The translations under genes and the position numbers were made by a program. A DNA stretch of 64,000 bases from Podarcis bocagei (lineage: Eukaryota): assembly GCA_964188305.1 (NCBI GenBank), contig OZ076892.1; one strand, written 5' to 3'. Below are positions 10,208-12,576 of the stretch, in pieces (position 1 is the stretch's first letter; the number at the start of each line of letters is the position of its first letter). The notes under the pieces were generated by a model. It ran no database searches and was not told where the DNA came from. It was given only the letters and a program-made list of their open reading frames with translations.

Positions 10208-10406
10208 CAAAATAAAAAAATTCCTTCCAGTAGCACCTTAAAGACCAACTAAGTTAGTTCTTGGTATGAGCTTTCGTGTGCATGCACACTTCTTCAGATA
10301 CACACGAAAGCTCATACCAAGAACTAACTTAGTTGGTCTTTAAGGTGCTACTGGAAGGAATTTTTTTATTTTGACTATGGCAGACCAACACGGCTACCTA
10401 TCTGTA
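10208..10406. mobile_element. Penelope-like element insertion: 73-bp inverted pLTR arms, 20-bp spacer, ~33-bp tail, 12-bp TSD
   Basis: Arms 10208-10280 and 10301-10373 are reverse complements. Tail actatggcagaccaacacggctacc. TSD acattctaccca at 10198-10209 and 10407-10418. Confidence 0.85.
10264..10301 (-). ncRNA. Minimal type I hammerhead ribozyme motif (PLE-associated)
   Basis: Minus strand GUAU-CUGAAGA-A-GUGUG(CAUG)CACAC-GAAA-GC-UC-AUAC: conserved core, stem II, 4-bp stem I and palindromic AGCU stem III. Confidence 0.7.
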
Positions 10407-10814
10407 ACATTCTACCCAGGCAGCAAGACTTTTCATACTGCAAAAGCACCCGAAATAATAGTTTCTAATTCAACAGTTGTATACCTGCTGGTAGAGAGAC
10501 AATGAGAATGGCTGTGCAAAATGTGCAAAGTAGTTCCAGAATCAGCTTGCATGTGCAACTGGAACATTGCAGTTTACATCCTATAGGCTTATGAGATATT
10601 AATTACTTAAATTTATATCCTGCCTTTCCTCCCAAAGGAGCCCAGGCCAGCAAACAACAAGTGATAAACAATTAAAAACATATTAAAAATGTATGTGTAC
10701 AAGTTGGTGGGTTTTTTCATGTTCCTGTCATTGCTGATAATCTATTTATTGTTGCAACTTATAAATTGAGACCAGCTTACTTGTGAGATTGTCTTACCCC
10801 ACATATATGCCTGC

Positions 10815-11190
10815 TTGACCACTTCAATCTGTGGAAGTGTCACTTTTACAGGCGCCACATAAAAATGTTCTGCATATGTAAGATATCAGTCTTTTAGTGT
10901 GGCAGCCCCTACACTTTGGAACTCCCTGCCTATTGACACCAAGCAGGTGCCTTCACTGTGTTCTTTTCAGCACCTGCTAAAATCATATTTTTTTTAGCAA
11001 GTCTAACCAGATGTGTAGAATGTGGGTGTATGTTTTAATCTGTTTTCAGTTTTGCTGATTTTGTGATTTGTAGAGTTTCTTTGTGGCTTTTTCGCTGATG
11101 TTACTGTTTTATTCTCTTTGTAAACCACTTTGAGGGTTTTTAGACAACCAAGCCATGCATAAATTCTATGAAACAAACCAACAAACAAAC
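10815..11190 (+). mobile_element. L2 LINE 3' fragment
   Basis: ttttagtgtggcagcccctacactttggaactccctgcc (FSVAAPTLWNSLP motif) followed by a T-rich UTR and an (AAAC)n tail. Confidence 0.75.
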
Positions 11191-11230
11191 CAGCCCACTG
11201 CAAATCACTTGTTCCTGGGTTCTCACTTAC

Positions 11231-11372
11231 CCTTCTCTCCTTGTCTCCATATTCCACGCCCAAAGTGTCCATTGCACGGACAATGGCTGCCAGTGACTGG
11301 ATAGTGTTGCTATAGACCACAGGCTTGTACTGCTTCACATCTTCACCAGAGAAGCCATCTTCGTGGATGATC
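11231..11372 (-). CDS. GNAO1: Internal coding exon (exon 3) of guanine nucleotide-binding protein G(o) subunit alpha
   Basis: Translates to [47 protein letters not shown], the G-alpha-o sequence. It has a pyrimidine-rich AG acceptor (plus-strand ct at 11373-11374) and a GTAAGT donor (plus-strand acttac at 11225-11230). The 142-bp length and phases fit vertebrate Gi/o exon 3. Confidence 0.96.
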
Positions 11373-11544
11373 CTTTGGGAGAGGGGAAGGAAACAAATGA
11401 GCTTGTAAAAGTCTGAAATAGTGCTTCATTTACAATGAAGTCATTCCCAAACCAATCCCCAAGGTTTTGCATAGTGTTAAGAGCTGGACAATGGACATTG
11501 CTTGCATTGTGTGAAAAGTGGCTCCATATAAACCTGGCTCTGGC

Positions 11545-11780
11545 TACTGGAAATTCTGAAGCATTCATGGAAGAGAAGGCCGTTGATGGCTATTAGCCAT
11601 GATGGCTATCTTCTGCTTCCAAGGCTTCAGAATACCAGTTGCTGGAAAGCACAGGAGCGGAAAGAGCTCCTGTGCTCCAGTCCCGCTTGCCAGTGTCCCA
11701 CAGGCATCTGGCTGGCCCCCTTGAGACCAGGGTGCTGGATTAGATGGGCCTCTGGTCTGATCCAGTAGGCTCTCCTTGGG
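11545..11780 (+). mobile_element. CR1-type 3' UTR fragment; related copies near 7478-7560, 12416-12575, 13740-13970, 14780-15010, 16820-17030, 54941-55040 and 61705-62110
   Basis: Recurrent motif atctggttggccactgtgagaacaggatgctggactagatgggcc...ctgatccagcaggctct..ttatg. Confidence 0.65.
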
Positions 11781-12310
11781 TTCTGACCCCTGGAGATGGT
11801 CACGGAAAGCTGGTGGGGATGTCAGAGATGCTGGCCACATTCTTCCCTCTGTTGTTTATCAGTGCTCATCTGATCTCTCCGTAGCTGCTAATTGTCCTTG
11901 CTCCCCCCTCCCAACCCTTAGGGGAAATTAGCAGCTAAAGGAGAGAGATAATGAGCACAGATAAACAATCAGCGGCTCTGTGGTCCCCTCCAGCGTCCTC
12001 TGCTCATCTCTGAGGGATTCTTCTGAATTCACAACACTCGAAGCCTGGTTTATATGTGGCTTCATTTCATGTGTCAAGAAGGGGTGAAGAACATGTGCCC
12101 CCTCCAATGATACTCAACTACAATGGCCAGTATCCTGATCATTGGCCATGCTTGCTGAGGATGATGGGAATTGGAGTTCAGGAATATCTGGAGGGTGACC
12201 AGCTCCCCACCCCTTCGCATAAAGTGTAGCCAGACTCTCAGAGCATGAACTGTGAGACAAGAGGTCCTTACTTCTGCCATGAAGTCACTACGTGAACATA
12301 AGAACAAAAG

Positions 12311-12410
12311 TCAAAATAAAAAAAATTCCTTCCAGTAGCACCTTAAAGACCAACTAAGTTAGTTCTTGGTATGAGCTTTCGTGTGCATGCACACTTCTTC
12401 AGATACACAC
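12311..12410 (-). mobile_element. Second copy of the young Penelope-like pLTR fragment
   Basis: Identical to 10208-10305 except for one A in the A-run. Flanked by ataagaacaaaag at 12298-12310 and 12416-12428. Confidence 0.85.
12369..12406 (-). ncRNA. Minimal type I hammerhead ribozyme motif, identical to 10264-10301
   Basis: Same GUAUCUGAAGAAGUGUGCAUGCACACGAAAGCUCAUAC sequence on the minus strand. Confidence 0.7.
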
Positions 12411-12576
12411 AAAAGATAAGAACAAAAGGAAAGTCCTGTTGGAGTAGGCCAAAGGCCCATATGGTCCTCCATCCTGGTCTTACAGTGACCAACCAGATCT
12501 GATGGGAAACGTATAAGCAGGATGTTAGCACAACAGCACTCTACCACCTGAGTGATACTGCCTCCAACATACAAAG

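What the first reader, a model, noticed from the sequence alone, without database searches (positions are those of the whole stretch)
10208..12428. GNAO1 exon 3 is bracketed by two identical hammerhead motifs on the gene's sense strand
Seen: the same 38-nt motif GUAUCUGAAGAAGUGUGCAUGCACACGAAAGCUCAUAC lies on the minus strand about 1.0 kb upstream (12369-12406) and 0.93 kb downstream (10264-10301) of exon 3, so both copies are in the pre-mRNA. Established: Penelope-like elements carry minimal type I hammerheads whose tiny palindromic stem III (here AGCU) is thought to need a tandem dimer to cleave well. Inference: two independent insertions have recreated a tandem, retrozyme-like layout around a host exon. 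Double cleavage (12373/12372 and 10268/10267) would release a 2105-nt RNA containing the 142-nt exon. Losing this exon shifts the frame, so this could attenuate GNAO1 or yield a circular RNA. Caveat: the downstream motif is partly masked by its own 73-bp hairpin.
Basis: partly seen in the sequence, partly recalled or inferred. Interest (0 to 1): 0.8.

Follow-up and report, generated by a model that had tools for sequence, protein, structure and literature searches.

The report
Two young Penelope ribozyme scars flank exon
Two identical hammerhead-ribozyme motifs do flank an exon of the lizard GNAO1 gene, but they are very recent, separate insertions of an abundant Penelope-type retroelement and most likely sit there by chance without cutting the exon out.

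Summary
The same 38-nt motif lies on the minus strand at 12369-12406 and 10264-10301, 1000 nt upstream and 930 nt downstream of the 142-nt G(o)-alpha exon (11231-11372).

By sequence it fits the published minimal type I hammerhead of Penelope-like elements (PLEs). No Rfam hammerhead model matches it.

Each copy has its own target-site duplication. The downstream copy is a fold-back, and one of its arms carries the PLE-specific 33-nt "tail".

The functional reading is not supported:
- The family has roughly 10,000 or more copies, so a few to a few dozen exons should be bracketed this way by chance.
- Contigs of three close relatives (0.4-2.9% diverged) appear to have both sites empty, so the layout is not conserved.
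- The downstream motif sits in a 73-bp perfect stem. Reaching a hammerhead-competent fold costs about +31 kcal/mol there and +6.8 upstream.
- The only link in a dimer would be a 4-bp AGCU helix across 2.1 kb.
- Published PLE hammerheads are inactive alone, weak as dimers, and protein-assisted in an anole.

RNA ends could not be examined, because only contigs were available.

An untested alternative is that the upstream copy, which is 75 nt complementary to the downstream antisense arm, promotes back-splicing.

This scan has already noted the same motif family many times elsewhere in this genome.

The parts
12369..12406 (-). Upstream minimal hammerhead motif. Layout: helix I GUAU/AUAC, core CUGAAGA, bulged A, helix II GUGUG-CAUG-CACAC, GAA, palindromic AGCU, C17. 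Predicted cut at 12373/12372.
   Evidence: Exact match. Parsed. Features match the min-HHR description in PMC4209133. No Rfam hammerhead hit.
12311..12415 (-). Upstream 105-nt PLE fragment in intron 2, without the tail. The 5 nt at 12411-12415 may be filler.
   Evidence: Alignment of the three arms. Boundaries read.
12416..12428 (.). Target-site duplication of the upstream insertion (13 nt). The other copy is at 12298-12310.
   Evidence: Read. Contigs of X1, X9 and X17 stop matching at 12297/12298 yet run on.
11231..11372 (-). GNAO1 exon of 142 nt, encoding G(o) alpha residues 55-101.
10264..10301 (-). Downstream minimal hammerhead motif. Predicted cut at 10268/10267. 24 of its 38 nt, including the cleavage site, lie in the hairpin stem.
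10209..10406 (-). Downstream fold-back PLE insertion in intron 3. The sense arm plus loop is 10209-10297. The antisense arm is 10298-10406 and includes a 33-nt tail at 10374-10406.
   Evidence: Inverted repeat I1, alignment, hairpin MFE of -143 kcal/mol. The optional 30-40 bp tail is described in PMC11167929.
10407..10417 (.). Target-site duplication of the downstream insertion (10-11 nt). The other copy is at 10198-10208.
   Evidence: Read. Contigs of X1, X9 and X17 start matching exactly at 10407 and continue 245-785 letters on the other side.
12314..12388 (-). Part of the upstream copy that is 75 nt / 96% complementary to the downstream antisense arm (10298-10372). This forms an inverted repeat across the exon.
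   Evidence: Inverted repeat I2. Two-strand duplex of about -140 kcal/mol.

Best explanation
These are two separate, very recent insertions of one abundant Penelope-like retroelement family. The upstream one is a 105-nt, 5'-truncated fragment in GNAO1 intron 2. The downstream one is a 198-nt head-to-head fold-back in intron 3. Each carries the family's minimal type I hammerhead motif, and both happened to land in the gene's sense orientation on either side of the 142-nt exon. Shown: motif identity, separate target-site duplications, the fold-back with a PLE tail, high copy number, and folding energetics. Inferred: both sites are empty in relatives. Also inferred: in the pre-mRNA neither motif cleaves to any meaningful extent, so the pair is a neutral or nearly neutral accident and not an exon-excising device. 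The fold-back probably arose from reverse transcription primed on both DNA ends, or from snap-back, with the halves joined at a CACAC/GTGTG microhomology inside the palindromic helix II.
For: 1. The three arms are identical from helix II to the 3' end, apart from one T in a T-run.
2. The target-site duplications are distinct, 13 nt and 10-11 nt.
3. The antisense arm alone has the 33-nt extension. This matches the optional 30-40 bp PLE tail and the extension of both DNA strands reported for the anole PLE.
4. Abundance: summed word depth in the repeat bins is 0.3-3 million, against 10-200 in single-copy bins. In X1, 15,186 contigs fit both copies. The rough estimate is 12,000-27,000 motif-bearing copies, giving 100-620 same-strand pairs within 2.1 kb and 3-27 bracketed exons per genome by chance.
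5. The unique contigs of X1, X9 and X17 break exactly at the target-site-duplication edges (10407; 12297/8) and continue for 183-1467 letters. A 31-mer contig could not do that through a 10,000-copy repeat. Their divergence from the window is 0.37%, 1.36% and 2.93%.
6. Energetics: a hammerhead-competent fold costs +31.0 kcal/mol downstream and +6.8 upstream. The AGCU:AGCU helix is worth only -2.5. In the MFE of the whole 2251-nt segment neither motif takes the hammerhead fold.
7. Literature: a single min-HHR shows no detectable cleavage and dimers cleave weakly. The anole PLE hammerhead does not cleave without PLE protein, and no RNA-seq ends were found at its site. Introns cut by a slow hammerhead still splice.
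8. The scan holds many notes of the same kind in this genome.
Against: No RNA-level data could be obtained, so low-level cleavage is not excluded. The copy number comes from summed contig word depth, which the tool itself says is not a copy number. Two lineage-private insertions 2.1 kb apart is somewhat unlikely unless thousands of recent insertions exist or PLEs prefer to insert near existing PLE copies, a preference stated in the review read. In vivo factors may raise PLE hammerhead activity.
Confidence: 0.8

Rival explanations
1. The two motifs pair through AGCU into a double hammerhead, both cut, and a 2105-nt RNA with the exon is released. This lowers GNAO1 output or, after ligation, yields a circular RNA.
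For: Both motifs are intact, identical and on the sense strand. Every core position expected of a PLE min-HHR is present. Hammerhead products carry ends that RtcB can ligate, and tandem ribozymes do give circles. An intronic ribozyme that lowers host expression has a precedent in CPEB3.
Against: The downstream motif is locked in a 73-bp perfect stem, at +31 kcal/mol. The antisense arm can pair with either sense copy, so both are never free together. The only link between the partners is 4 bp (-2.5 kcal/mol) across 2.1 kb. PLE min-HHRs are inactive alone, weak as dimers and protein-assisted. Slow intronic cleavage does not block splicing. The layout is not conserved and is expected by chance. 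No Rfam hammerhead hit.
Confidence: 0.03
2. The pair acts through base pairing, not catalysis. The upstream sense copy pairs with the downstream antisense arm (75 nt) and loops out the exon. This favours back-splicing to a 142-nt exon circle, or exon skipping, in carriers.
For: Inverted repeat I2 is 75 nt and 96% complementary across the exon. The two-strand duplex is about -140 kcal/mol, similar to the local hairpin at -138. The antisense arm is transcribed about 90 nt before its local partner. Complementary sequences in flanking introns induce single-exon circles in vectors, and competing pairs decide the outcome.
Against: The antisense arm's partner within the same intron lies only 14 nt away and is 99% complementary. 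It wins in the 2251-nt MFE. Pairing within an intron competes against circularisation. No RNA data. A 142-nt circle is near the small end for back-splicing (my own knowledge).
Confidence: 0.08
3. Only the upstream motif, which is not in a long hairpin, cleaves slowly on its own or with PLE protein where that protein is expressed. This gives a minor loss of nascent transcripts.
For: The upstream motif needs only +6.8 kcal/mol to reach the competent fold. Protein-assisted cleavage is published for an anole PLE.
Against: Single min-HHRs showed no detectable activity. There is no helix III without a partner. No RNA-seq ends were found at the anole hammerhead site. Exon tethering buffers slow cuts. 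No PLE ORF lies nearby.
Confidence: 0.05
4. The downstream 73-bp perfect intronic hairpin is processed as double-stranded RNA, by A-to-I editing or small-RNA production. This would be a by-product, not a function of the pair.
For: Hairpin MFE of -143 kcal/mol. It resembles generic long-hairpin miRNA precursor models at 53-62 bits, all below their gathering scores.
Against: All those hits are below threshold and reflect only a long perfect stem. No small-RNA or editing data. This does not explain the bracketing.
Confidence: 0.15

Closest known systems
Minimal hammerhead ribozymes of Penelope-like elements (Cervera & de la Pena 2014, PMC4209133; Lunse et al. 2017, cited in PMC6765202)
   Same: Type I topology, no loop 3, palindromic 15.1-16.1 (AGCU), an extra nucleotide between A9 and G10.1, a G10.1-C11.1 pair, short helix I, longish helix II. 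Thousands of mostly solo, truncated copies per genome. Also reported in reptiles.
   Different: This is a lacertid family sequence that I did not find in the paper library. Helix II is itself a 14-nt palindrome. The 5' flank forms a competing hairpin with the 3' strand of helix II.
Poseidon PLE of Anolis carolinensis (Frangieh et al. 2024, PMC11167929)
   Same: A squamate PLE with a hammerhead near the pLTR/ORF junction, an optional 30-40 bp tail from two reverse-transcription start sites, and extension on both DNA strands. These features fit the fold-back with one tailed arm.
   Different: Here the ATG in loop II opens only a 9-codon frame, so these copies are non-coding fragments. The cut site is 16 nt from that ATG, not 26. 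No ORF is present in the window.
Animal non-LTR retrozymes (Cervera & de la Pena 2020, PMC7229834; Li et al. 2026 bioRxiv)
   Same: Direct repeats of a type I hammerhead that in vertebrates work as dimers. A double cut plus RtcB gives circles. They are related to PLE pLTRs.
   Different: Retrozymes are head-to-tail arrays of a 170-400-nt unit. Here the 2105 nt between the motifs is unique host sequence with an exon, made by two separate insertions. No circle was shown.
Intronic self-cleaving ribozymes that affect the host gene (CPEB3 HDV-like ribozyme, PMC10919898; amniote intronic hammerheads HH9/HH10, from my own knowledge)
   Same: A ribozyme motif on the sense strand of an intron in a neuronal gene.
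   Different: Those are single, stable, monomer-active ribozymes conserved across mammals or amniotes. These motifs are unconserved, apparently lineage-private, and not expected to be active as monomers.
Inverted-repeat-driven exon circularisation (Zhang et al. 2014; Liang & Wilusz 2014; PMC5052039)
   Same: Complementary repeats in the two flanking introns, here 75 nt.
   Different: The repeats are PLE fragments, not Alu or SINE. A stronger competing partner lies 14 nt away in the same intron. No back-splice evidence.

Membership tests
PLE minimal type I hammerhead (min-HHR) | Conserved core C3-U4-G5-A6-N7-G8-A9 and G12-A13-A14, with A15.1/U16.1 and a non-G at position 17 | tested here: met
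   CUGAAGA ... GAA, then A-GC-U and C17, identical in both copies.
PLE minimal type I hammerhead (min-HHR) | No loop 3, palindromic 15.2-16.2, an extra nucleotide between 9 and 10.1, and a G10.1-C11.1 pair (PMC4209133) | tested here: met
   AGCU with no loop, a bulged A after A9, and helix II opening with G and closing with C.
PLE minimal type I hammerhead (min-HHR) | Helices I and II form in the motif's context | tested here: inconclusive
   The isolated motif gives -6.0 kcal/mol for the hammerhead fold against an MFE of -6.8. In context the competent fold costs +6.8 upstream and +31.0 downstream.
PLE minimal type I hammerhead (min-HHR) | Covariation in the helices across family members | not testable with these tools
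   Only two identical copies are readable. The other genomic copies could not be fetched.
PLE minimal type I hammerhead (min-HHR) | Self-cleavage at C17 | not testable with these tools
   All runs were contigs, which cannot show RNA ends.
Rfam hammerhead families (Hammerhead_1, _3, _II, HH9, HH10) | A covariance-model score at or near the gathering score | tested here: not met
   No hammerhead match at gathering over the window, nor at E up to 10 over 10100-12550. This is expected for motifs without helix III / loop 3.
Penelope-like element insertion | Optional 30-40 bp 3' tail, giving two alternative 3' ends | tested here: met
   The antisense arm runs 33 nt (10374-10406) beyond the end shared by the other two arms (PMC11167929).
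Penelope-like element insertion | Target-site duplication, 5' truncation and frequent inverted 5' structure | tested here: met
   Duplications of 13 nt and 10-11 nt. A fold-back with 76-nt arms.
Penelope-like element insertion | Link to an element encoding RT plus GIY-YIG endonuclease | not tested
   No such ORF in the window. The link rests on earlier scan notes and the features above.
Retrozyme (non-LTR, animal) | Head-to-tail tandem repeats of a 170-400-nt unit, each with a hammerhead | tested here: not met
   Only the 105-112-nt ends are repeated. The 2105-nt interval is unique intron and exon plus other interspersed repeats.
Retrozyme (non-LTR, animal) | Circular RNA of unit length | not testable with these tools
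   No raw RNA reads. No RNA contig covers a 10268/12372 joint among the rows shown.

The most novel reading that the evidence does not exclude
In animals that carry both insertions, the pair changes how the GNAO1 exon is processed. The more likely route is the 75-nt complementarity across the exon, giving a back-spliced 142-nt circle or exon skipping. A less likely route is protein-assisted hammerhead cleavage where PLE protein is made. Close relatives seem to lack both insertions, so this would be a natural, very recent allele series in a dosage-sensitive neuronal gene.
Probability: 0.07. Interest if true: 0.5.

Novelty: new member of a known kind. Interest (0 to 1): 0.15.

Why it matters
As it stands this is ordinary: two more copies of a retroelement family whose minimal hammerheads are already described and occur by the thousand. 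It is a useful caution that intact ribozyme cores on the sense strand of introns, even paired around an exon, are expected by chance in PLE-rich genomes. One modest point of value remains. Both insertions look absent from very close relatives, so carriers and non-carriers would give a clean natural test of whether such motifs, or the cross-exon complementarity they create, affect splicing.

Tried and rejected
- Rfam at gathering and at E up to 10 gave no hammerhead. The only hits were sub-threshold miRNA-like ones caused by the long hairpin.
- The run search found no raw-read or confirmed RNA run. All 24 runs were contigs, so RNA ends, strand and expression level could not be read.
- RNA-guess run X19 had no depth on the exon. 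The tool's human-likeness filter can cause that, so it is no finding. X19 showed only about 90%-alike copies of the repeat inside other transcripts, plus one low-depth intron-3 contig at 10477-10725.
- An exact-string search of the paper library for three pieces of the repeat found nothing. Lunse et al. 2017 is not held.
- A nested-structure energy for the double hammerhead could not be computed, because helix III between the copies crosses helix I. I summed the parts instead.
- Two motifs alone prefer a 14-bp intermolecular helix II duplex (-30.6 kcal/mol) to any hammerhead dimer.
- I looked for a PLE ORF in the window. No Pfam domain was found in ORFs of 130 aa or more.
- I considered reading heterozygosity from the two-fold depth differences among X1 and X9 contigs. 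I rejected this, because the reference alleles are absent at the listed sites and coverage bias explains the pattern as well.
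Full report
**Observation**

The 38-nt motif occurs exactly twice in the 64-kb window, both times on the minus strand, at 12369-12406 and 10264-10301. No shuffle gives a match. The start-to-start spacing is 2105.

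The exon between them runs from 11372 to 11231 on the minus strand. It is 142 nt, with an AG acceptor and a GTAAGT donor. Its 47 full codons match G(o) alpha residues 55-101 at 89 bits, against 51 bits for G(i)1. No other exon of the gene is in the window. I call it exon 3 from its size and position in the protein, using general knowledge of the G(i/o) gene structure.

The hairpin arms are 76 nt with one mismatch, and 73 bp are perfect.

**What the motif is**

The motif parses as follows:
- helix I: GUAU/AUAC
- core: CUGAAGA
- one bulged A
- helix II: GUGUG-CAUG-CACAC
- GAA
- AGCU
- C17

Cervera and de la Pena (PMC4209133) define the minimal hammerheads of Penelope-like elements (PLEs) by this set of features:
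- type I topology with no loop 3
- palindromic 15.2-16.2
- a G10.1-C11.1 pair
- a short helix I and a long helix II

They report thousands of copies per genome, mostly solo and truncated, including in reptiles. All sequence-level features are met here.

No Rfam hammerhead model matches, at gathering or at E up to 10. That is expected for a motif without helix III, but it means membership rests on the published descriptor, not on a covariance score. Covariation could not be tested, because only two identical copies are readable.

**What the insertions are**

Aligning the three arms shows they are identical from helix II to the 3' end, apart from one T in a T-run.

The upstream copy is a 105-nt fragment (12311-12415). 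It is flanked by a 13-nt target-site duplication at 12298-12310 and 12416-12428.

The downstream copy is a head-to-head fold-back (10209-10406). It is flanked by a 10-11-nt duplication at 10198-10208 and 10407-10417.

The antisense arm of the fold-back runs 33 nt further (10374-10406) than the other two arms. Frangieh et al. (PMC11167929) show that an optional 30-40-bp tail, produced by two reverse-transcription start sites, is a signature unique to PLEs. They also show that the anole PLE protein cuts and extends both DNA strands. Together these explain a fold-back with one tailed and one untailed arm.

The two halves meet at a CACAC/GTGTG microhomology inside the palindromic helix II. The joining mechanism is my inference. 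No PLE ORF is present in the window.

**Abundance and chance**

When contigs of three whole-genome runs were laid on 10150-12500, the repeat bins carried summed word depths of 0.3-3 million. Single-copy bins carried 10-200. In X1 alone, 15,186 contigs fitted both copies.

The tool warns that this is not a copy number, so I use it only for order of magnitude. It suggests 12,000-27,000 motif-bearing copies, or one per 45-130 kb.

With that density, chance alone gives 100-620 same-strand pairs within 2.1 kb. It also gives 3-27 exons bracketed within about 1 kb on the sense strand per genome, and 0.1-1 in the part of the genome this scan has read.

The scan's notebook lists 118 notes on Penelope hammerheads in this genome. 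Several are sense-strand intronic copies, and one is a cluster of five within 2.3 kb. Those notes are unchecked leads, but they point the same way.

A review also states that PLEs tend to insert into or next to existing copies.

**Age**

In all three DNA runs the unique contigs behave the same way:
- The contig covering the right flank of the downstream site starts matching exactly at 10407, the first base of the duplicated target. Yet it has 245-785 further letters on the other side.
- The contig covering the left flank of the upstream site stops matching at 12297/12298, the last base before the duplicated target. Yet it runs on for 183-1467 letters (table 8).

X17 record 9 lies on the plus strand, so its reading is unambiguous. 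The end of X17 record 16 is fixed by its 30-nt overlap with record 15.

A 31-mer contig cannot run through a perfect repeat present in thousands of copies, and a filled site would have aligned. Both breaks also fit a single convention, the leftmost placement of a joint over the duplication.

I conclude, at about 85% confidence, that both sites are empty in organisms A, E and I. Their unique sequence differs from the window by 0.37%, 1.36% and 2.93%.

It fits the near-identity of the copies. It means the layout is private to the window's lineage or polymorphic, and not conserved.

**Would it work as a ribozyme pair?**

*Thermodynamics.* The downstream motif has 24 of its 38 nt, including C17, inside the perfect stem. 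The hairpin's MFE is -143 kcal/mol, and forcing the hammerhead-competent fold costs +31.0 kcal/mol.

The upstream motif also prefers a different local hairpin, in which the 5' flank GUGUGUAU pairs with AUGCACAC of helix II. That costs +6.8 kcal/mol to undo.

In the MFE of the whole 2251-nt segment, neither motif takes the hammerhead fold.

The dimer contact is a 4-bp AGCU:AGCU helix worth -2.5 kcal/mol. It would have to form across 2.1 kb. Two isolated motifs prefer a 14-bp helix II duplex instead.

There are two sense copies and one antisense arm, and the antisense arm is complementary to both (I1 and I2). One sense copy can therefore always be sequestered, so both motifs being free together is strongly disfavoured.

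*Biochemistry from the literature.* A single PLE min-HHR showed no detectable cleavage. Dimers and trimers cleaved weakly, mostly at non-physiological Mg2+.

The anole PLE hammerhead did not cleave without the PLE protein, and no RNA-seq reads ended at its site.

Introns cut by a slow hammerhead are still spliced, because the exons stay tethered to the polymerase. Only fast ribozymes abort splicing.

Both insertions are about 1 kb from the splice sites.

**What could not be tested**

All runs found were contigs and none is on record as RNA. RNA ends, junctions and exon inclusion therefore remain unexamined. The RNA-guess run had no depth on the exon, which the tool's human-likeness filter can cause, so it is no finding.

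The exon was used only by reference and as a single exon.

The upstream sense copy and the downstream antisense arm form a 75-nt, 96% complementary inverted repeat across the exon. As two strands the duplex is worth about -140 kcal/mol.

Complementary sequences in flanking introns are the classic driver of back-splicing, and competing pairs decide the outcome. Here the competing partner lies 14 nt away in the same intron, is 99% complementary, and wins in the global fold.

I therefore give this route only about 8%. It is still more plausible than double ribozyme cleavage, at about 3%.

**Verdict**

The retrozyme-like, exon-excising interpretation is not supported.

The best explanation, at about 0.8 confidence, is a chance, very recent pair of fragments from an abundant retroelement with no dedicated function. 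It is a new member of a known kind, and the interest is low.

Noticed in passing
window 49478-50864: A second, different PLE family forms a 1.29-kb fold-back inside a (TA)n tract. It carries its own minimal hammerhead-like motif on each strand, at 49602-49631 (minus) and 50741-50770 (plus): core CUGAAGA, bulged U, 6-bp helix II, GAA, palindromic ACGU. The minus-strand copy is also sense to GNAO1, in the same intron 2.
   Followed up: partly
window 10311-10370 (minus strand): Read in the gene's sense, the antisense arm of the fold-back carries AAUAAA (10365-10370), a pyrimidine tract ending in CAG (to 10351) and GGUAUGAG (10311-10318). These outline a 33-nt cryptic-exon-like unit (10318-10350) that contains stop codons. 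All of it is buried in the perfect stem. Untested.
   Followed up: no
window 12314-12388 and 10298-10372: The upstream PLE copy and the downstream antisense arm form a 75-nt, 96% complementary inverted repeat across the exon. This geometry is known to favour back-splicing.
   Followed up: partly
window 12377-12415 and 10272-10310 (minus strand): Within the family sequence, the 5' flank GUGUGUAU pairs with AUGCACAC of helix II. This hairpin competes with the hammerhead fold, and may be why the PLE protein is needed for cleavage, as in the anole element.
   Followed up: partly
window 10545-10702, 10861-11018, 11572-11808, 12125-12203: Other interspersed repeats lie inside the 2.1-kb interval. 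Their summed contig depth is 100 to 2000 times the single-copy level in three genomes.
   Followed up: no
window 11852-11880 / 11940-11968: An inverted repeat with 29-nt arms, 83% complementary, sits in intron 2 about 480 nt upstream of the exon. It gives weak sub-threshold miRNA-like Rfam hits.
   Followed up: no
window 1-64000: Only one GNAO1 exon lies in the window, so intron 2 exceeds 52 kb and intron 3 exceeds 11 kb here. No ORF of 130 aa or more has a Pfam domain.
   Followed up: yes
window 351-368 (minus strand): A degenerate match (3 mismatches in 18) to the tail end of the same PLE family. It may be an older copy.
   Followed up: no
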